A stretch of 63,897 bases of DNA, counting the filler, from Reticulomyxa filosa (Eukaryota > Protista > Foraminifera): NCBI GenBank assembly GCA_000512085.1. It is 18 parts of 18 records of this genome, joined end to end, with 100 filler letters (N's around TTAATTAATTAA, not from the genome) between each part and the next. Parts side by side here need not be neighbours in the genome. Positions count along the whole stretch, not along the records: positions 36,224 to 47,256 come from ASPP01008414.1; 17 more parts are not named here. The stretch is one strand, 5' to 3'. Within the stretch, counting starts at the first letter, position 1, and each line of letters opens with the position of its first letter. The position numbers and the translations under genes are program-made. The notes beneath the pieces were generated by a model that saw only the letters and a program-made list of their open reading frames with translations, was not told the origin of the DNA and searched no databases. This document shows, piece by piece, positions 39,801 to 48,049 of the stretch.

Positions 39801-42488
39801 TCTTGACAATATTTTTGAAAAGCTAATTTGATTTTTTTGGGATTTGTCTGAATTTTTAATTCTGACAATTTAGATAAAATATTTTTCACGTGAATGTCAA
39901 TCCATTGTTCATTAAATGCTTCATACACTTGTGCTTTTGATATTTTACTGTCTGCTCCATATTGTTTTACCAATGATGGCAACACAGTTAAAATAAGTTG
40001 AAGAAGAAATGGTTCTTCTATCATTTTCAACAAGTTTGGATAATTATTCAGCGTTTCTTCATATTGCTGTGAGGACCAAATTTTCTCTTTATTTTTTTTG
40101 TTATTTTTGGATCTCGTAATTGCAAATTTTTCAATATAGCTGTGCATTTGTTGTTTTGTAAATGGCCATAAATACATCATCGATGTATCATTTTGATTTA
40201 CATCAATTAGAGCGGCATTAATATCATCGTCATGTAATACATTGCTTCGACAAGTAATAACAATTTTCGCATTCCATTGATTCAAATTAAAGCGATCATA
40301 AAAATACTGTACATTATCAAAAGTGCGATAAAAATCAAATATCTCATCAAATCCATCCATAATAAATACAAAGGATAATTTTTCACGAATTGTATCCATA
40401 ATTTCTTTGTTTATGTGCTTGCATTGTAATGCTTGCAAAATAATATCCTTTTCATTTTGTTTATTGTAAAGTTTTGATAATGAAATATAAATTGGAATAT
40501 CTTTTTTTAAGTCTGACAAATTAGTTGCTTCCCACAAAGCTTTTTCCAAATGACGGCAAAATATACTTTTCCCTGATCCTGATTTTCCTTGAATTATCAT
40601 TACTTTCCTCTTTTGTTCTTTTTCTTGTTTCTCTTCGCTTTGTTCTTGCAAAAATTCAAGCACGTGTTGATGACAGTCATATGTTTTTTCATTTGCACCA
40701 TCTTCACCATCCATGTGTGGATAATTGTTCGCTTGCAGTGGAATATATGTTTCAAGTGCTTGCGATATGGCAACATCTTCTTCTAATTCTTGTTTTCTTG
40801 ATTTTTGTAATAGTGCTAGAAAATCTGCATAACTTGCCAGATTCTTGTCTCCGATAATATACTTTTTATAATAGTCGTATAAAATTACATAAAGTGCTTT
40901 TCCCTTCATCCCCTCCGGAGTGAATTTGCAAAGTTGTTCATATGCAAATTGTGCCACTTTCAATGAGATGTTTTTTTTAATCTCTTCTTCTGTTCTATTT
41001 GACAGTTGTGGCGGTTTAAGTATCATGATATTCGAGTGAGTTTTATAACGCTCTGCAATTTTTTTACTTCCTTTTTCGTCAATCCATTCGCAAATGATAT
41101 CATTGATTTTAGTTAATGTTTTGTCGCTCGCTTGCTTTAATTTTTGTTCTTGTGTTGATGAAACATTTGGCTCCCATGCTCGAATTAATTCATAAAATAA
41201 ATGACTTAATTTTGGATTTTCAATGACAGTGTATCCTTCTAAAGTTGTAAAATTTTTTAATGTTGCTTGCATTTCAATATAAACATCATGTTTTGGAACA
41301 TATAATTTAATATTATGAAATCTGTGATGTGTTTTTGATTGTTTATCAAAAAAATCTTTATCTTCAGACACAATTAGATTAAATTGTTCTGCTTTTTTCA
41401 TTACTATTACCGCAGTTTGTAACGTTGTAGGATTATTACATAAAATGGTAAATCTTCCAATATCAAATACTTGATTATAGTTTCCCTTGTAATCACGTTC
41501 AATCTTTTCCAGTAATCTTGCCTTATCTTTTACTTTGGATGGTTTGACCACCGTGATGGAATACCTTTCTAATTCCTTCACTAAATTTACAATCTCCACA
41601 CTTGCCATTGCATTTTCACTGCGAGCAATTAAGTCTTCTAGACTTATAGCATGTTGTCTGATTTTGCTTGCTTTCAATTCATATGTTAATCCTGGCTTGA
41701 CTATATAAAAGCATTGGTAGTTATTACTTTTCACTGGTGCCGTGTCATCGTTTGCGCGAATTGAATGTTCCGAATTAAAAAACATTACCTTGACAATAGA
41801 CGTCACTGTTGGCTGCTTGCAATATGGACAGCAATAGGATGTCTTATCTGAAGTAAATGAAATATCAGCAAATCCAATATTCACCCATACCGGGAGGTTT
41901 GCTTTTGAAGCCAAGCAGCTCTGATTATATACGCAATAGCCCTGCAAATTAATCCCTGGATTAGTTTCTCCAATTTCTGCCTTTTCATCTTCTTTTTTCA
42001 ATGAACTGTCTGTTTTCTTTTTTTTTTTTTTTGTGCAAATATATGCTTGTAAACAGGGCCAAAAGTAAAGAAACAAAATTATAGCTGCAATTTATAGTAG
42101 CATTGTGAAACCTGATCATTTTGTTTGTTGTCTATGTCATTCTCTGGAATCTCAATCTTTTTTATTGTGTATTGATTATGAAAATCAATTGAAATAAAGT
42201 TAGTGTAAAAAATTTATTTTATACATTTTGATTTATCAATTTCGAAATAATCTTTTCAACCACCAGAGCTACGCTGCCATTATTTTCTTCTAATTGTTTC
42301 TCTAATTCGTCTTGATCAATGGTGCCGCTACATAATCTTTTTAGCATCTTCATTTCTGTTGCGTACTTTTCCTGTCCATTTTCGCTGTGCATTCCTCCTA
42401 CAAGCCTTTCCTTGTTAATATGACCAAATTCTTTCTTGTTATGTGCGAACACGTGGGTACTCTCTTTAGTCTTCTGACAAAACGTCAT
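36869..42488 (-). CDS. NLR-like STAND protein: Cys/Zn module - RelA/SpoT-like nucleotidyltransferase - NACHT - pentapeptide repeats - 16 WD40 repeats
   Basis: One ~5.1-kb exon (within ORF 36869-42076) plus probable short 5' exons (42219-42488). Walker A IQGKSGSGKS (~40565-40595), Walker B FVFIMDGFDE (~40345-40375), IVITCR, FLHKSCQEY, AAANAITIL with pentapeptide repeats (~39040-39250) and 16 WD40 repeats (~37040-39030). RSH-like motifs lie at ~41170-41560. Confidence 0.9.
37040..39030 (-). repeat. Tandem ~126-bp WD40 coding repeats (16 units)
   Basis: The unit LEGH....V..V.FSPDGSKIVSCS.DKTIRIWD recurs about every 42 aa and is recognisable at the DNA level (TCCCATATTCGAAT recurs). Confidence 0.95.
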
Positions 42489-42871
42489 TACAACTCATAT
42501 AATATCACTCACTAGCAAAAATGTGAATTCATTCAAAACTTGGATTGAGTTTGGAATTACTGAAGTTTTTTGCATGATATGCGTTCTATTATCCGTTATT
42601 TTTTTTAAAAAAAAGGGGAACACAGAAAAACTGCACGCTACAAGTACGACAACCTTTGCAAGATGTACGTTTTACTGTCAGCGTTCTACTTAGCAAATCC
42701 TTCATTTTAAAAAAATAACATCACATCATTCAACGATTAGCTTAATAGTGCAAAGAAAAAACATTTTTTAAAAGATTTAGAAAAGTGAATACTATATTTT
42801 GTGCGATGTTTGAAATTTGCAGAATGATTGTAGGAATATTCTATTCTTAAAAAACTATTGCTAAAAAACAA

Positions 42872-44712
42872 TTATAAATGATCTCCTTTTGGCTTTGTGT
42901 AATGATAAGGTTTATCGTCACCAGGACAAAAGGCATTAAAGACAGCAAATCCGTAGTTTTGGATATGTGCTGGAACAACAACATTTTTTCCCGATTTGAA
43001 AGTATTGCAAAAGCCTCCTCCGTCAATCATCAAGAAGTGGATGATGTCGACTAACATACTCCATCGAACTTGGAAATTTCGTCTGGACCAATCTTGCTCT
43101 CGTTGCGGTCTATCTGTCGTCCACACGATACTGTCATTTGGCAACTGCAATCCGAAATAATTGAACTGCGTATCCCAATATGTGTATCCAACCAAGGTGG
43201 GTTCGTCCAGACTACTCGCCCAGGGATCGCCCATGGCCGGCATCAATTCCACAATGAATGACCCATTTTGTCTCATCCATATTGCATCTTGCAAATGTGC
43301 ACCTATTTCATTAACGCAATATATTTGTATATATATATGTACATATATATACAAATATATGTACATATAAATGTATATACACATATATGTATGTATATAT
43401 ATGGTACCATGGATGCCAAAAACGAGATCAAAAATACGATGTTTGATGACGACATCTCTGGAATGAAGAAAGCCCTCCAATAAAATGGAGTCACAAGCGA
43501 TGAAGAAGGGATTGAGCATGGTGTTGCAATTGCGAAGGATATCATCCAAATTGGTCCAACGCCTCCGCACAATGCGTTGATAAAAGCCGATGACTCTCCA
43601 TTTTGGAACCTGGTTCAAGGGAACGACGACGGGGGAATGGGGACTCATCGATTTCAAAATCTGCGTCAATTGCGTTTGTTTGAATAACAGCGTATCACGT
43701 TGCAAGTAAATATCGACCGAGTCGATATATTGGTTCAGAGAGGAAATGACAATAGGATACAAGCCCAAGGACCCGAACGAGGGCAAGTCAATTGGGTGCA
43801 AGGGATGACGTGTGGTGTTATGGACAACATGCAACGTATCCCAAAAAAAAGCCACAAAAGAACATGCGCCGGAAACACTTGCAGCCAAATGGGGTTCAGT
43901 AAATCGGTGATATGTTGGACATGCCAGTGCGTAAACTTTTCCAAGAATAAGTGATGGAACGTAAACAACGGACTCTGATCTTGCATGACAATCCAAAATT
44001 GTACGTCCTTATCAAACGCAAGTGACGTGGGGCCATATTCAAAGTGGTAATAGAGGAATCTCATCACACGAATGAAAAACTCGCCCAGCATTGTCATGTA
44101 TTTCGCTTCGAGGATCATGTGGTTCACTATTGGGTGGTATGCACATTTGGCTTCGTTGTATTCGTCCTGAGTTCGCGACTGGTTCCACGGCTCTGCTTTG
44201 AAAAACTGTCGATATACGTCGTTCGACTTGCTTACGACTGACTCAACGTCCACCAACTGTCCTAACAAATCCCAATGCTGCATTTGCAATTCAAACGTCT
44301 CCGAATCGTTGCGCACGTAAAAGTGACCGTTGTGTACACAAATGTCGTTCCAGTACGGGCAGCTCTCCATTCCATTTACACGGCTCATTCGTTGTGGCTC
44401 CAATGTCAACCAATCCTTCGATGCATAGCCTTGGCTCGCTGTTTTCGACTCCTTTTTTTGTGCATGTTCATCACTTTCATGTGCACCCACTGCTTTTCCT
44501 GCTTGTGCTCGCTCCTGACTGTGCTTGTCTTCTTTGCTCAGAACAGAGGACGAAGGAAGGCCCACCACCTCTGATATTAATAACTTTGTTTGCAACAGAT
44601 TATCACTCAATATCCAACCCAACGCAAAAAAAATACAAATCAACATTAGCCAGAAGGCAGATAACAGCCCAGTTCTGTGTTGTCCATGCTCGCCAAGGAT
44701 AGTCAATTTCAT
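42872..44712 (-). CDS. Glycosyltransferase family 61 (DUF563-like) type II membrane protein; apparent frameshift near 43880
   Basis: N-terminal TM (AFWLMLICIFFALGWIL), a stem region and CPYWNDIC. The GT61-type motif DLVFGIHG|AHLQDAIWM....FIVELMP is restored across the intron at ~43304-43404. Confidence 0.7.
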
Positions 44713-45207
44713 TGAAAACACAACTTTTGACCCTTTTATCTTCGAGCATCTTTCAAGTCCCAAAAAATTTTTTGTTTCTTACTCTTTGCACCTAGTAAAT
44801 TTTTTTAACATCTTTGAATAGATTTATCCTTTGTTTTAATTTAAAATATAGTAGAAAGGATTTTGCCACCACATAGTCAATTATCATTTCAGTAAAAAAA
44901 TGAACCAAAACACATTGACTTTTCTTCGTCGGCTAGCGGAACAGGTTCTAAAATTCTGAGAATGCCCCTTTTCGACTAGTTTTCGCGCATTTGAATTCAG
45001 TTGTGTGTTGAACAGCTTTTATTTCCAATTCATTATTGAGGAATTTTGAGCTTTTTTTAGGTATTTTTATTTTATGTTGATTTTGGTCTCTTACATTTTT
45101 TTTGTCCCTTCTTTTTTTAAGAAAAAAAAAAAGCAAATTCTCATAGCGACAAAACAAGTTTTTTTTTTAAAAAAAAGTAAAGGACCAGAACCCAACACAG
45201 TACATAA

Positions 45208-45888
45208 ATGGCAGTAAGTGAAACAGCGACTCTAGAACAATTAAACTATGTAAACTACGTAATGCACGGATTTGTTCCAAGCCAAATGGCGTACCGAAAA
45301 GCCGCGACGATACAGCAAAGAAGTCCCAATAGCAGTGTATATGCAGCGACATCTCCTCACTCACGAATGGGAGGGATTGCAGGCATTCCTGGCGTGAACC
45401 CATCTCCTCGAGGGTACAACACAGCAGGGACATCACCAGTCCACGACGCGTACCCCGCTCTTTATACGACCAACGTGAACATTCCCCAAAGCAACGACGA
45501 AGACAGGCAAATGAGTATTGGATCGGACAAGCAAGCTTTGTATCCAAAGTTGCATCATAACGGCCACAACATTCACCACAAAAATAACAATAACAACTAT
45601 TATCGCAATGACGTATCACCCAAGAGTGGATCAAGCGGAATGAACACGATGACCCACTCACCCCCTGCGGGTACGTATAATGATGGATTTGCAGCCATGA
45701 AATTGACCGTTGAAAGTTCCAGAAAAGGCACTGCCTCACCCACTTCTCTTGTGTCGTCCCCTCCCGTCCATTCCGCTGCAAACTTACCTCATTTAGGATT
45801 CGACCATTGCATGACCATTATCATTGTCCCCCAAAGTCCGATCCCGGAAAACGTCAAACAAATCAATGCTGGCTTGCACTGGGATTAA
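45208..45888 (+). CDS. Hypothetical low-complexity Ser/Pro/Asn-rich protein or terminal exon
   Basis: 226-aa ORF with coding-like GC content, followed by a long U-rich 3'UTR-like region. Confidence 0.5.
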   Translation: MAVSETATLEQLNYVNYVMHGFVPSQMAYRKAATIQQRSPNSSVYAATSPHSRMGGIAGIPGVNPSPRGYNTAGTSPVHDAYPALYTTNVNIPQSNDEDRQMSIGSDKQALYPKLHHNGHNIHHKNNNNNYYRNDVSPKSGSSGMNTMTHSPPAGTYNDGFAAMKLTVESSRKGTASPTSLVSSPPVHSAANLPHLGFDHCMTIIIVPQSPIPENVKQINAGLHWD

Positions 45889-48049
45889 CATGATTTTTTA
45901 CAAACTTTTTTACTTCAAAAAAAAAAAAATGTATCTACTCATTGAGTTTTTGTTTGTTTTTTTTTTTTGTGTGTTTTGTTTGCGTTTTTCGTACATTTTG
46001 TCGTTTCCCTCGACAACTTGCATTCTTTTGGTCAAATGCCATCTGTACGTAAAAAAAAAAAAATTTTTTTATACGTTTTTTTTTTGTTGGGGTTTTTTTT
46101 TGGTATCTCAACAAAGTCTAACTTTTTTACACCTTTCACTTTTTTATGGTTGTGATGTTTGTTCAAGTCTTATTATCATTGTGGTTTTTTTTTTTTGTTT
46201 GTTTTGTTTTCAAATTTCGCCGTATTTTGTTTGTTTGTTTTCTTTTGTCTTTTTGTTTGTTTTAGTGTTGTATTTTGGTGCTTCTTATTTTGGTGTTTGT
46301 TTCTTACCTTTGGTGTGACCTTTGTTTTTGTCCTTGTGAGTGAATTAGAAGCAACGGAATTAAATGCAATTACAATAAACACGAAAGCACACAGAACAAA
46401 AAATCTATGTTCTTGAAATCACTCAAGGGCAACAAATGGTCACCCGTAATTTTTTTTTTTCCCATTACCGTCCTGTTCTTTTTTTTGTTTCGCCAATGGA
46501 GAGTACACTAACTCTATTGAATTTCTTTTTTGTTGTTCCTTTTTTTTTACCAGCGAAAGTGTGAGTTGTCTTGTTTTTCTATTTCTTTATTCCTTTACTT
46601 GTTTGCTGCGTTTTTACATTTTGTTAGTTGTTTTTTTTCTTTGTTTTTGGTTTAGTGATGCTTTTCATTTTTGTTTTTTTTGGAAAGATTTTTTTTTTGT
46701 TTGTTGTTTTTTGTGGCAGATGTGTATAAAAAACGTGGCAATTTTAAAACAAGAACACTCGCTTTGTTTTTTTTTTTGAGTGATGTTTCTCCTTTTTTTT
46801 TTCGCAATGCAAACGCGAATAAACTCCTTTGCCATTAGAGACATTTCAAATTTGGTTGGCCTGTCATTTGCGTTTCATTGAATTCTTGGCAAAAAGTTGA
46901 ACAATTTTAAGCCTTTTAAACTGTCCAGCAGCATAATTCAAGTAGTAAAAGCTGACAAATGAGTAGTATGCTTTCATTTTCAACTTTTTCTGGCCTAAAA
47001 GATATGCCATAACCGACAGTGTTTTAAGCCTGAACATTTATCTTTGACGATATTTGAACGTAATCCTTTCAAAAATAATTGATTTCTTTTTCTTAACAGT
47101 TACAAAAGAAAGGGTAGTTTTCAAAATTGAAAAGGGGAGACGATCACACAATTCGTTTTTTAAGGAAATTGCGCCCCAGTGTCTGTCCTCTATTTCAAAG
47201 CAATGTTTTCGTCAAAAAAACGCAAACTGAATGACCTGACCACGTATTGTTTCTCTNNNNNNNNNNNNNNNNNNNNNNNNNNNNNNNNNNNNNNNNNNNN
47301 TTAATTAATTAANNNNNNNNNNNNNNNNNNNNNNNNNNNNNNNNNNNNNNNNNNNNCCATAACATGACTCAATCTTTGTTTCTTGTTGTGCCAATTTGAT
47401 GAATATTCTATGTGCCTTGCAACGAGGGTCTTTGTTGCTGTACCATCATATTCAAATCCATTTGTACAACAGACACGCTCTTGATATCAAAGCTGGGACT
47501 CTTGTCAAGGAGGATACGAAGGGCGAGTAGTTAGTACGGCTTGCTGGAGGTGTGGTCGAACAAATTTGTTTGGGAGTAATTTGTGCAAGAATAGCTCTGT
47601 TCGACTTGTGCCGATATAACTAACTGTTGTTATCAACAGTACATGTGCTCTCGAAACCCAATCCATTCTATAGCAAGTGTTTCTTTGTCACACATATCTT
47701 TGACGGCACCCCACGCGAAATGTTTTTGGCGCACACGTAAATGCTTCCTCTGGATATACGTCGAATTGATAATATGCCCCCCTATCCAAATACGCGAACA
47801 ATTTCGGCTATTAGCTGAGTATGTATATCACAAAACAATGTATCTTAGTGACAACTTTTTATTTTGTTTTCGATTTGTATTTTTTTTAAATTTTTTTGAA
47901 TTGAAATGAACTGCAACACGAATGTGAGAATACGTGTAGTCCGGAACAATTATAATATATCAATATCTCACAAAGCATCCACCAATGTACATATTATAAC
48001 AACCGATCTCTTGCAACATCGACACTCTTTTTCTTGTTAAGGCCTTCAC

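What the first reader, a model, noticed from the sequence alone, without database searches (positions are those of the whole stretch)
41170..41560. RelA/SpoT-like (alarmone synthetase-fold) effector domain fused to a eukaryotic NACHT-WD40 receptor
Seen: residues ~175-300 of the 1735-aa ORF read KVKDKARLLEKIERDY ... VFDIGRFTILC ... KTHHRFHNIKL ... YIEMQATL ... SHLFYELIR, upstream of a complete NACHT and a WD40 sensor. Established: RSH synthetase cores have, in this order, a basic K...K segment, a metal-binding Asp, an aromatic/His segment and ExQ. STAND/NLR proteins activate N-terminal effectors by oligomerising. RelA_SpoT N-termini are known in fungal NLRs, and toxic small alarmone synthetases (e.g. 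CapRel) act in bacterial anti-phage defence. Inference: this is a single-chain protist immune system in which ligand binding by the WD40 propellers switches on a pyrophosphokinase. The product could be (p)ppGpp or (p)ppApp, or the enzyme could modify tRNA. The putative catalytic Asp and Glu are intact. I know of no characterisation in this lineage but cannot confirm novelty without a search.
Basis: partly seen in the sequence, partly recalled or inferred. Interest (0 to 1): 0.9.

Follow-up and report, generated by a model that had tools for sequence, protein, structure and literature searches.

The report
Tas1-like pyrophosphokinase on a foraminiferan NLR
A Reticulomyxa filosa gene, one of more than fifty copies, joins a domain closest to a bacterial ATP-consuming toxin to an immune-type NACHT-WD40 receptor; this design is known from fungi, has not been tested in any eukaryote, and I found no report of it in this lineage.

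Summary
The piece is a Reticulomyxa filosa contig with a three-exon, 1818-aa gene on the minus strand. Window 41075-41647 encodes a RelA/SpoT-homologue (RSH) synthetase fold. For the AlphaFold model, all 50 Foldseek rows shown are alarmone synthetases (Tas1 first, E 4e-7). VIA-align gives Z 12-13 to SAS2, SAS1 and Tas1, against about 8 for generic nucleotidyltransferases. A profile of R. filosa copies alone hits only Tas1 in the PDB (E 0.008). A profile that adds distant relatives hits Tas1 at 4e-26 and SAS2 at 1e-11. The motif residues (K-x-K, EK, D-x-x-R, E-x-Q, H-x-x-Y-E-x-x-R) are invariant across relatives only 20-30% identical. They are kept in about 95% of roughly 85 R. filosa copies. 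Downstream lie a NACHT above Pfam's threshold, pentapeptide repeats and 16 WD40 repeats. The domain is closest to Tas1/Apk-type (p)ppApp-synthetase toxins carried by eCIS and MuF proteins, not to housekeeping (p)ppGpp synthetases. The likely role is an NLR-triggered, nucleotide-consuming death or arrest effector. Activity, product and trigger are inferred only. RelA_SpoT-NACHT-WD40 proteins are already catalogued in fungi, so this is a new member of a known but uncharacterised kind.

The parts
42225..42488 (-). Exon 1 (88 codons, ATG at 42486-42488). Residues 36-88 (42225-42383) form a three-helix UBA/CUE-like domain.
   Evidence: The exon matches annotated protein P0002, and a GT donor follows it. 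The helical domain is conserved in paralogues. The fold match is weak: VIA Z 5.2 to a CUE domain (1otr, 49 aa, 2.5 A) and several UBA domains at Z 4.2-4.7. Pfam CUE gives E 0.029.
42112..42156 (-). Exon 2 (15 codons), flanked by introns 42157-42224 and 42017-42111, both GT-AG
36869..42016 (-). Exon 3 (1715 codons plus the stop at 36869-36871). It encodes the beta domain, RSH domain, linker, NACHT, pentapeptide repeats and WD40 array.
41660..41974 (-). Cys-rich beta-sandwich domain with a CPxC zinc-ribbon-like knuckle (P0002 residues 118-222)
   Evidence: The model has pLDDT above 88. G, C, W and CPxC columns are invariant or nearly so in paralogues. There is no Pfam match and no clear known fold: Foldseek E is at least 0.06 and the best VIA Z is 5.8. 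The same domain is repeated up to 9 times, or fused to ubiquitin, caspase or trypsin domains, in other proteins.
41075..41647 (-). RSH (RelA/SpoT-homologue) synthetase-fold domain of Tas1/Apk-like type (P0002 residues 227-417). The motif residues are K264/K266, R270, E273-K274, D288, R291, K323, E351, Q353, H375, Y378-E379 and R382.
   Evidence: Foldseek: all 50 rows shown are RSH synthetases, with Tas1 first at E 4e-7. VIA: Z 12.8 SAS2, 12.4 SAS1, 12.2 Tas1 (168 aa, 3.4 A), 11.2 CapRel. PDB profile searches. Pfam. Invariant columns. Codon positions.
41170..41560 (-).
40127..40603 (-). NACHT NTPase domain, with Walker A GKSGSGKS and Walker B FIMDGFDE
   Evidence: Pfam PF05729 gives 39.6 bits against a cut-off of 26.7. 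The motifs are read from the translation.
39032..39214 (-). Pentapeptide-repeat stretch between the NACHT module and the WD40 array
   Evidence: Pfam PF00805 gives 22.4 bits against a cut-off of 20.2; PF13599 gives E 8e-6.
37040..39022 (-). 16 WD40 repeats, mostly exact 42-aa units, enough for two propellers. Variability is concentrated at repeat positions 15, 16, 18, 19 and 34.
   Evidence: Pfam WD40 gives E 7e-160 over 16 stretches. Repeat dissection and per-column entropy. DNA-level 126-bp periodicity at about 75% identity.

Best explanation
This is an NLR-type (STAND) receptor of the foraminifer Reticulomyxa filosa. Its effector is a Tas1/Apk-like nucleotide 3'-pyrophosphokinase domain of the RelA/SpoT-homologue superfamily.

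Shown here:
- The domain order is UBA/CUE-like, then Cys-rich beta domain, RSH synthetase fold, helical linker, NACHT, pentapeptide repeats and 16 WD40 repeats.
- The RSH domain keeps every conserved active-site motif.
- It is closest in sequence to bacterial toxin domains of the Tas1 type.
- The gene is one of at least 50 full-length paralogues.

Inferred, from how NLRs and Tas1 are known to work:
- A ligand bound by the variable face of the WD40 propellers releases the NACHT module. The module oligomerises and brings the N-terminal enzyme domains together or un-inhibits them.
- The enzyme then transfers pyrophosphate from ATP to an acceptor nucleotide. The most likely acceptor is adenine nucleotide, giving (p)ppApp as Tas1 does.
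- This drains ATP and ADP and causes local growth arrest or death of the infected or non-self-fused cytoplasm.

My odds:
- RSH fold and homology: 0.95.
- Catalytically active: 0.7.
- Defence or allorecognition role: 0.55.
- Product is (p)ppApp: 0.4.
For: Fold:
- All 50 Foldseek PDB rows shown are alarmone synthetases, tRNA pyrophosphokinases or Rel/SpoT enzymes.
- VIA-align gives Z 12.8, 12.4 and 12.2 to SAS2, SAS1 and Tas1, clearly above generic nucleotidyltransferases at Z about 8.

Sequence:
- Pfam RelA_SpoT matches 27 of 29 paralogue modules.
- The profile built from R. filosa copies hits only Tas1 in the PDB (E 0.008).
- The exhaustive search links that profile to bacterial eCIS-core and MuF toxin proteins (P0141, E 3e-11). 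The P0141 toxin domain itself hits only Tas1 (E 5e-11).
- The combined profile hits Tas1 at 3.9e-26, SAS2 at 1e-11, RelP at 3e-7 and RelSeq at 6e-7.

Active site:
- K266, K274, D288, R291, E351, Q353, H375, Y378 and R382 are invariant across relatives 19-30% identical; R270, E273, K323 and E379 are at least 90% conserved.
- Each is kept in about 88-98% of the R. filosa copies that cover it.
- The Asp and Glu-x-Gln align with the D-x-x-G-x-R and E-x-Q-x-R-T motifs of SAS2 and RelP.

Features shared with Tas1 and absent from canonical SAS:
- [IVL]K-x-x-x-R-x-x-x-K-I-x-x-D-Y-x-G.
- D-x-x-R-x-T.
- H-x-x-Y-E-x-x-R.

Receptor:
- The NACHT scores above Pfam's cut-off and has intact Walker A and B motifs.
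- There are 16 regular WD40 repeats with variability focused at a few positions.

Family size and origin:
- 52 long and 47 short R. filosa entries were found.
- GT-AG introns show it is a eukaryotic gene.

Literature:
- Tas1 makes (p)ppApp and kills by depleting ATP and ADP (PMC10083569).
- RelA_SpoT is an N-terminal NLR domain in fungi (PMC4986451).
Against: - No activity, product, ligand or phenotype has been measured.
- No expression data could be found.
- This copy scores below Pfam's gathering threshold (20.8 against 27 bits).
- The Tyr of the canonical G-Y-R motif, which is also Tyr in Tas1 and in most aligned distant relatives, is His here (T-H-H-R-F-H-N). The Arg-Thr after E-x-Q is missing, as in Tas1. 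So acceptor specificity cannot be read from the sequence.
- By structure, Tas1 is tied with SAS1 and SAS2 rather than clearly nearest.
- A tree of the domain is a star, so the sister group is unresolved.
- The homodimer prediction gave no verdict.
- An ATP-draining enzyme in a eukaryote would normally need a safeguard, and none was looked for. The structure model rests on 29 fairly close paralogues.
Confidence: 0.6

Rival explanations
1. The architecture and the activity are as proposed, but the chemistry differs. The domain makes (p)ppGpp, either as a signal or to interfere with bacterial prey and symbionts as suggested for fungi. Alternatively it pyrophosphorylates the CCA end of tRNA and blocks translation, as CapRel, FaRel2 and PhRel2 do.
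For: - The fold is as close to SAS1 and SAS2 (Z 12.4-12.8) and CapRel (Z 11.2, 171-175 aa aligned) as to Tas1 (Z 12.2).
- The acceptor-site aromatic residue is His rather than Tyr, so the specificity may differ from Tas1.
- Dyrka et al. suggested that fungal NLR RelA_SpoT domains manipulate prokaryotic signalling.
Against: - By sequence, only Tas1 is hit by the R. filosa profile.
- Tas1 is 14 orders of magnitude ahead of SAS2 with the wider profile.
- No CapRel or toxSAS sequence match appeared at E up to 1.
- The nearest non-foraminiferan relatives carry eCIS_core or MuF delivery domains, like the described Apk toxins.
Confidence: 0.25
2. The RSH-like domain is a pseudo-enzyme. It serves only as a scaffold or adaptor, or is an evolutionary relic, and the family signals through other partners.
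For: - The score is below Pfam's threshold.
- The canonical Tyr is replaced by His and the Arg-Thr after E-x-Q is lost.
- Some paralogues have deletions over the motifs (P0038, P0040, P0043, P0064).
Against: - All metal-binding, ATP-binding and catalytic positions are invariant between R. filosa and bacterial toxins at 20-30% identity.
- They are retained in about 95% of copies that differ by 25-50% elsewhere. That pattern is expected under selection for catalysis.
- The missing Arg-Thr is also missing in active Tas1.
Confidence: 0.1
3. The protein is a regulatory STAND NTPase that makes a nucleotide second messenger for ordinary physiology, such as stress, starvation or cytoskeletal or reticulopodial control. 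It is not an immune or death receptor.
For: - RSH enzymes are classically stress regulators.
- Not all STAND proteins are immune.
- No infection or fusion data exist for R. filosa.
- The UBA/CUE-like N-terminus hints at links to ubiquitin pathways.
Against: - A family of more than 50 diverging paralogues fits recognition repertoires like fungal NWD/HET-E NLRs better than housekeeping control.
- So do regular WD40 repeats whose variability is focused on a few positions.
- The nearest relatives of the enzyme domain are delivered toxins.
Confidence: 0.15

Closest known systems
Tas1 (Apk1) of Pseudomonas aeruginosa and the MuF-fused Apk2 toxins: (p)ppApp synthetase toxin domains (PDB 6ox6; PMC10083569)
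   Same: - It is the nearest solved protein by sequence and the top Foldseek hit.
- The motif variants [IVL]K-x3-R-x3-K-I-x2-D-Y-x-G, D-x2-R-x-T, E-x-Q without Arg-Thr, and H-x2-Y-E-x2-R are shared.
- The nearest non-foraminiferan relatives sit on toxin-delivery proteins (eCIS_core, MuF).
   Different: - Here the domain lies inside a eukaryotic receptor, upstream of NACHT-WD40. It is not at the C-terminus of a secreted or injected bacterial protein.
- No PAAR, MuF or eCIS domain and no adjacent immunity gene are present.
- His replaces the Tyr of G-Y-R/S.
- Identity to Tas1 is only about 18%.
- Activity is untested.
Fungal RelA_SpoT-NACHT-WD40 NLRs, e.g. in Gaeumannomyces graminis (Dyrka et al. 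2014, PMC4986451; Sordariales survey PMC12258605)
   Same: - The tripartite design is the same: RSH-type N-terminal domain, NACHT, WD40 repeats.
- The repeats are regular and internally conserved.
- The organism is filamentous or syncytial.
- The fungal proteins also lack biochemical characterisation in the papers read.
   Different: - The lineage differs (Rhizaria).
- The family is very large here (at least 50 full-length copies), whereas RelA_SpoT is a rare class in fungi (under 1% of annotated N-terminal domains; 17 or so NLRs across Sordariales).
- Extra UBA/CUE-like and Cys-rich beta domains sit in front.
- Whether the fungal domains belong to the same Tas1-like branch, or share ancestry with these, was not tested.
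CapRel (SJ46) and other toxSAS tRNA pyrophosphokinases (PDB 7ztb, 9erv)
   Same: - The fold is the same (Z 10.8-11.2, 171-175 aa aligned).
- It is a single chain in which a sensor part controls a toxic RSH domain in defence.
   Different: - There is no sequence-level match.
- CapRel is controlled by a small C-terminal antitoxin-like domain that binds a phage capsid protein, not by a NACHT-WD40 oligomerisation module.
Small alarmone synthetases RelQ/SAS1 and RelP/SAS2 (PDB 5ded, 6fgk, 6ewz)
   Same: - They give the best structural Z-scores (12.4-12.8).
- The Asp and E-x-Q align.
   Different: - They are stand-alone bacterial (p)ppGpp synthetases with D-x2-G-x-R, G-Y-R-S-x-H and E-x-Q-x-R-T motifs, which differ here.
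- The sequence match is much weaker than to Tas1 (1e-11 against 4e-26).
Bacterial NACHT (bNACHT) and other STAND anti-phage proteins with enzymatic N-terminal effectors (Kibby et al., 10.1101/2022.07.19.500537)
   Same: The logic is the same: N-terminal toxic enzyme, NACHT, C-terminal repeat sensor.
   Different: - This is a eukaryotic, spliced gene.
- An RSH effector was not among the examples in the passages read.
- Defence has been shown experimentally for bNACHTs but not here.

Membership tests
RSH (RelA/SpoT homologue) synthetase superfamily / Pfam RelA_SpoT PF04607 | Reaches Pfam's gathering score for PF04607 | tested here: not met
   This copy scores 20.8 bits (E 5e-4) against a cut-off of 27. 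27 of 29 paralogue modules match at E up to 0.1, best 2.3e-6.
RSH (RelA/SpoT homologue) synthetase superfamily / Pfam RelA_SpoT PF04607 | Significant sequence or profile similarity to solved RSH synthetases | tested here: met
   The R. filosa profile hits Tas1 at E 0.008. The wider profile hits Tas1 at 3.9e-26, SAS2 at 9.8e-12, RelP at 2.7e-7 and RelSeq at 6.3e-7.
RSH (RelA/SpoT homologue) synthetase superfamily / Pfam RelA_SpoT PF04607 | The alpha/beta synthetase fold of SAS/Rel enzymes | tested here: met
   The model has pLDDT 79.5. All 50 Foldseek rows shown are RSH synthetases. VIA Z is 12.2-12.8 over 153-168 residues, against about 8 for other nucleotidyltransferases.
RSH (RelA/SpoT homologue) synthetase superfamily / Pfam RelA_SpoT PF04607 | Active-site motifs in order: basic [RK]-x-K...K, metal-binding Asp with nearby Arg, aromatic-Arg segment, E-x-Q, and H-x-x-Y | tested here: met
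   K264/K266...K274, D288/R291, H335-R336 (His in place of Tyr), E351/Q353 and H375/Y378 are aligned to SAS2, RelP and Tas1. They are conserved in paralogues.
RSH (RelA/SpoT homologue) synthetase superfamily / Pfam RelA_SpoT PF04607 | ATP-dependent 3'-pyrophosphotransfer activity | not testable with these tools
   This needs enzymology.
Tas1/Apk-type (p)ppApp synthetase toxins | Closer in sequence to Tas1 than to (p)ppGpp synthetases, with the Tas1-type motif variants | tested here: met
   Tas1 is the only PDB hit for the R. filosa profile. The bridging relative P0141 hits only Tas1 (5e-11). Shared motif variants are seen in the alignments. By structure alone, Tas1 ties with SAS1 and SAS2.
Tas1/Apk-type (p)ppApp synthetase toxins | C-terminal toxin domain on a delivery protein (PAAR, MuF, eCIS) with a cognate immunity gene | tested here: not met
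   Here the domain precedes a NACHT-WD40 receptor in a eukaryotic gene. No delivery domain was found by Pfam. The neighbouring ORFs have no family match.
Tas1/Apk-type (p)ppApp synthetase toxins | Synthesis of pApp, ppApp and pppApp with ATP depletion | not testable with these tools
   This needs nucleotide profiling.
NLR / STAND NTPase of the NACHT class | NACHT domain above threshold with Walker A and Walker B | tested here: met
   PF05729 gives 39.6 bits against 26.7. GKSGSGKS and FIMDGFDE are in the translation.
NLR / STAND NTPase of the NACHT class | Tripartite layout: N-terminal effector, central NTPase, C-terminal repeat sensor | tested here: met
   RSH domain 41075-41647, NACHT 40127-40603, 16 WD40 repeats 37040-39022.
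NLR / STAND NTPase of the NACHT class | Ligand-induced oligomerisation that activates the effector | not testable with these tools
   A homodimer prediction for the RSH domain gave no verdict, which is not evidence either way.
Fungal RelA_SpoT-NACHT-WD40 NLRs | Same Pfam-level domain architecture | tested here: met
   The architecture is listed for G. graminis in PMC4986451. The same three domain types are found here.
Fungal RelA_SpoT-NACHT-WD40 NLRs | Common descent of the RSH domain or of the whole gene with the fungal proteins | not tested
   No fungal sequence could be fetched by reference. None of the hits whose source was looked up (30 of the 150 listed) was fungal.

The most novel reading that the evidence does not exclude
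R. filosa, a giant multinucleate network-forming cell, maintains a repertoire of more than 50 NLRs. Their warhead is a bacterial-toxin-type (p)ppApp synthetase. Recognition of a virus, an intracellular bacterium or non-kin cytoplasm after fusion would trigger local ATP collapse. This would be a eukaryotic counterpart of abortive infection or heterokaryon incompatibility. It would also be the first case of (p)ppApp made by a eukaryote's own immune receptor. The enzyme domain would have been captured from bacterial eCIS- or MuF-type toxins.
Probability: 0.3. Interest if true: 0.8.

Novelty: new member of a known kind. Interest (0 to 1): 0.55.

Why it matters
NLRs with enzymatic N-terminal effectors link bacterial, fungal, plant and animal immunity, but protist repertoires are almost unexplored. 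RSH-type NLR effectors have been catalogued in fungi since 2014, and none of the papers read reports a biochemical test. This R. filosa family is large and well conserved, and its enzyme domain sits next to toxins with known chemistry (Tas1/Apk). That gives a concrete, testable prediction: ATP-draining (p)ppApp synthesis as a eukaryotic cell-death or arrest effector. It also gives a compact domain that can be expressed in E. coli or yeast. If confirmed, adenosine alarmone chemistry would extend to eukaryotes, and toxin-to-immune-effector domain capture would be documented in a new supergroup. If the domain proves inactive, the finding is one more annotation of a known architecture.

Tried and rejected
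- Literature searches for Reticulomyxa with NACHT or with alarmone found nothing. A broad multi-term search was uninformative. A protist NLR search gave nothing relevant.
- No RNA sequencing run holds the locus. Only low-share DNA contigs of a 'synthetic metagenome' were listed. Expression and splicing could therefore not be checked, and read laying was not used.
- A homodimer prediction for the RSH domain (residues 108-310 of the module, two copies) scored 0.01: no verdict, no evidence either way.
- A maximum-likelihood tree of 55 RSH domains was essentially a star (32 of 52 inner branches open). The R. filosa clade is monophyletic (99%) on a long branch with no resolved sister, so no donor or direction of transfer can be claimed.
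- Foldseek and VIA-align on the N-terminal 225 residues found no convincing fold for the Cys-rich beta domain (E at least 0.06; Z at most 5.8). They gave only weak CUE/UBA matches for the helical domain.
- Pfam found nothing in the neighbouring ORFs of the piece.
- Contamination by bacterial DNA was considered and rejected. The gene has two GT-AG introns, low G+C, and dozens of paralogues on other R. filosa contigs.
- A chance motif match was considered and rejected on the statistics.
- I could not fetch a fungal RelA_SpoT NLR or a Mesh1/SAH/Aph1-type hydrolase by reference. Comparison with the fungal domains, and a search for a detoxifying hydrolase in R. filosa, were therefore left out.
Full report
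**What the piece is.**
Places 36224-47256 are an 11,033-base contig of the foraminifer Reticulomyxa filosa. The long minus-strand ORF 36869..42076 is identical to most of an annotated 1818-aa protein, P0002, named 'NB-ARC domain-containing protein [Reticulomyxa filosa]'.

Mapping the protein back onto the DNA shows three exons: 42225-42488, 42112-42156 and 36869-42016. They are separated by two short introns with GT donors and AG acceptors. G+C is 26-45%. The gene is eukaryotic and spliced, not bacterial contamination.

**Check of the observation.**
Window 41171-41560 (minus strand) translates to SITVVKPSKVKDKARLLEKIERDYKGNYNQVFDIGRFTILC...KTHHRFHNIKLYVPKHDVYIEMQATL...SHLFYELIRAWE.

- Pfam gives RelA_SpoT (PF04607) at E 0.0011 to 0.0005 and 19.6-20.8 bits. 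That is below the 27-bit gathering score.
- 27 of 29 paralogous modules match the same family, the best at 2.3e-6.
- A single-sequence search of the PDB put Tas1 (6ox6) first, but only at E 0.23.

**Paralogues.**
The word-indexed protein search found 52 long R. filosa proteins (954-1990 aa) that share the N-terminal module at 47-77% identity. Nearly all of them have NACHT and WD40 Pfam hits. It also found 47 shorter, mostly partial entries.

Close relatives outside the R. filosa assembly are only three environmental sequences: P0055, P0107 and P0113.

An alignment of 29 modules (A1) shows that F-D-x-G-R-F-T-I-L-C is invariant. S-E-D-K-D-F-F, K-T-H-H-R-F-H-N-I-K-L, D-V-Y-x-E-M-Q-A-T-L and S-H-L-F-Y-E are invariant or nearly so.

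**Is it an RSH fold?**
AlphaFold2 on A1 gave a model with mean pLDDT 79.5.

- Foldseek against the PDB returned 45 matches at E up to 0.001. All 50 rows shown are RelA/SpoT-homologue synthetases: Tas1 first (E 4e-7), then RelP/SAS2, RelQ/SAS1, CapRel, an exported Streptomyces SAS, Rel and SpoT.
- VIA-align re-scoring gave Z 12.8 (SAS2, 6fgk), 12.4 (SAS1, 5ded), 12.2 (Tas1; 168 residues, 3.4 A) and 11.2 (CapRel).
- Unrelated nucleotidyltransferases such as Cid1, URT1, cGAS and pol lambda lie at Z 7-8.
- The fold spans model residues 117-307, which is P0002 227-417 and window 41075-41647.

**Which branch of the superfamily?**
- A profile built only from the R. filosa modules hits a single PDB sequence, Tas1 (E 0.008), through the segment I-K-S-R-E-R-A-M-Q-K-I-N-N-D-Y-K-G-D...D-L-A-R-N-T-I.
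- The exhaustive HMMER search of 1.84 billion representatives with that profile found 156 proteins.
- Beyond the R. filosa clusters, the best are P0141 (3127 aa, E 3e-11) and P0162, both carrying the eCIS_core toxin-cargo domain. There is also a Polyangia DUF4157/eCIS protein (P0187) and a MuF/SPP1-gp7 protein (P0186). These are the kinds of delivery scaffolds described for Tas1-like (p)ppApp synthetase toxins (Apk1/Apk2; PMC10083569).
- The toxin domain of P0141 alone hits only Tas1 in the PDB (E 5.4e-11).
- An alignment of the window's domain with 20 such relatives (A2, 19-30% identity to the window outside the R. filosa-type sequences) gave a profile that hits Tas1 at 3.9e-26, SAS2/YwaC at 9.8e-12, RelP at 2.7e-7 and RelSeq at 6.3e-7.

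The alignments show features shared by the window's domain, these toxins and Tas1, but not by canonical SAS or Rel enzymes:
- an Arg three residues after the metal-binding Asp (D-x-x-R-x-T, against D-x-x-G-x-R);
- E-x-Q not followed by Arg-Thr;
- H-x-x-Y-E-x-x-R at the end.

By structure alone, Tas1 is tied with SAS1 and SAS2. A tree of 55 domains is unresolved apart from a 99%-supported R. filosa clade. I therefore claim 'Tas1-like' on sequence and profile grounds only, and I make no claim about a donor.

**Catalytic residues.**
R270, E273, Y279, G281, K323 and E379 are at least 90% conserved. D288 and E351-x-Q353 align with the D-I-A-G and E-I-Q motifs of SAS2 and RelP.

| Residue | Kept among the 123 sequences at least 40% identical that cover the position | Note |
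|---|---|---|
| D288 | 83 of 87 | |
| E351 | 75 of 83 | 7 of the 8 exceptions are gaps |
| Q353 | 81 of 90 | 7 of the 9 exceptions are gaps |
| H375 | 85 of 89 | |
| R382 | 85 of 89 | |

Most exceptions are fragments or models with internal deletions (P0038, P0040, P0043, P0064, P0109). The second refutation criterion ('catalytic residues not conserved among paralogues') is also not met.

One family-specific difference stands out. The Tyr of the G-Y-R motif stacks on the acceptor base in Rel and SAS enzymes (this is from my own knowledge of RelSeq and RelQ structures, not tested here). In R. filosa it is His (T-H-H-R-F-H-N).

**The rest of the protein.**
- **NACHT.** Residues 575-733 are a NACHT domain (39.6 bits against 26.7) with Walker A GKSGSGKS and Walker B FIMDGFDE.
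- **Pentapeptide repeats.** A short stretch follows.
- **WD40 array.** There are then 16 WD40 repeats, 13 of them exactly 42 residues long. Column entropy peaks at repeat positions 15, 16, 18, 19 and 34, and the scaffold positions are nearly fixed. This is the pattern reported for the WD repeats of fungal NLRs (PMC4986451). It fits a recognition surface, but that is an inference.
- **Exon 1.** In front of the RSH domain, exon 1 encodes a conserved three-helix segment. It has weak CUE/UBA-like fold matches (Z 5.2 to 1otr over 49 of 49 residues, and several UBA domains at Z 4.2-4.7). Pfam CUE gives E 0.029.
- **Cys-rich beta domain.** Residues 118-222 form a confidently modelled Cys-rich beta domain with a C-P-x-C knuckle. 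It has no Pfam family and no convincing structural neighbour.

**How it most likely works.**
Shown here are the architecture, the fold, the intact motif set, the affinity to Tas1-type toxins and the size of the family. The following is inferred from established NLR/STAND behaviour and from Tas1 biochemistry (PMC10083569):
1. A ligand binds the WD40 propellers.
2. The NACHT module exchanges nucleotide and oligomerises.
3. The clustered or released N-terminal enzyme transfers pyrophosphate from ATP to an acceptor.
4. If the acceptor is AMP, ADP or ATP as in Tas1, the ATP and ADP pools collapse and (p)ppApp accumulates.
5. This arrests or kills the affected part of the syncytium.

The rivals are:
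- a different acceptor ((p)ppGpp, or tRNA as in CapRel);
- a pseudo-enzyme;
- a non-immune regulatory role.

My attempt to test self-association of the domain in silico gave no verdict. No RNA data were available.

**Comparison with what is known.**
[quoted passage not shown] It is still listed as a rare 'canonical' class in fungi (PMC12258605; PMC10197012). None of the papers read reports a biochemical test.

I found no paper that mentions Reticulomyxa together with NACHT or alarmones. The public names of these proteins ('NB-ARC domain-containing', 'WD-40 repeat protein', 'hypothetical') do not mention the domain.

Tas1-like RSH domains also occur in other protist proteins:
- a diatom protein with NPHP3_N and WD40 domains (P0189, Proboscia alata);
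- Guillardia theta (P0183), Triparma (P0211) and a dinoflagellate (P0195);
- an Ank-RSH-NACHT protein of unknown origin (P0205).

**Verdict.**
It is a new member, in Rhizaria and in large copy number, of a known but uncharacterised kind: NLRs with an RSH-type effector. The added point is that the enzyme belongs with (p)ppApp-synthetase toxins. Interest is moderate (0.55). It would rise sharply if (p)ppApp synthesis or ATP-depleting death were demonstrated.

Noticed in passing
window 41660-41974 (-); also P0148, P0161, P0175, P0157, P0169, P0191, P0207: The Cys-rich beta domain in front of the RSH domain has no Pfam family and no clear structural neighbour. It recurs elsewhere: 9 tandem copies in P0148, 5 in P0161, and fusions to ubiquitin-like (P0157, P0169), caspase (P0191) and trypsin-like (P0207) domains. 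The Atlas feature search points to rotifer proteins (score 0.90-0.92). It may be an undescribed adaptor or recognition domain of conflict systems.
   Followed up: partly
window 42225-42383 (-), exon 1: A three-helix domain is conserved in paralogues, with the pattern K-Y-x-x-E-M-K-x-L-x-R-L...N-G-N-V-x-x-V-I-E. It has weak CUE/UBA-like fold matches (Z 4.2-5.2) and Pfam CUE at E 0.029. This suggests a possible ubiquitin-binding module at the tip of the receptor.
   Followed up: partly
window 37040-39022 (-): The 16 WD40 repeats are very regular (13 of exactly 42 aa). Variability is concentrated at repeat positions 15, 16, 18, 19 and 34. This resembles the hypervariable positions reported for fungal NLR WD repeats.
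   Followed up: partly
window 42872-44763 (-): Two overlapping long ORFs in different frames lie upstream of the gene, interrupted by an AT-rich microsatellite at 43319-43403. They have no Pfam match. The Atlas feature search of the 374-aa ORF gives Glyco_transf_61 clusters in 29 of 30 hits (score 0.91). This is probably a spliced GT61-type glycosyltransferase gene, and is a lead only.
   Followed up: partly
P0046 (R. filosa, 1017 aa), residues 593-948: The same beta-domain and RSH module sits at the C-terminus of a protein named as VCBS-repeat-containing, after a Ser-rich stretch, a hydrophobic segment and a charged coiled region. There is no NACHT or WD40. It is either a different deployment of the module or a fused gene model.
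   Followed up: no
P0205 (1170 aa, metagenome); P0189 (Proboscia alata, 1394 aa): Tas1-like RSH domains are combined with STAND parts outside foraminifera. P0205 has ankyrin repeats, then RSH, then NACHT. The diatom protein P0189 has NPHP3_N, then RSH, then WD40, with the RSH domain after the P-loop region.
   Followed up: partly
P0038, P0040, P0043, P0064, P0109 (R. filosa paralogues): Several paralogue models have deletions that remove the E-x-Q or H-x-x-Y motifs. They may be pseudogenes, mis-spliced gene models or assembly gaps. This bears on how many of the copies are functional.
   Followed up: no
window 39032-39214 (-): A pentapeptide-repeat stretch lies between the NACHT module and the WD40 array. 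It is also recorded in the precomputed Pfam lists of many paralogues (PF00805).
   Followed up: no
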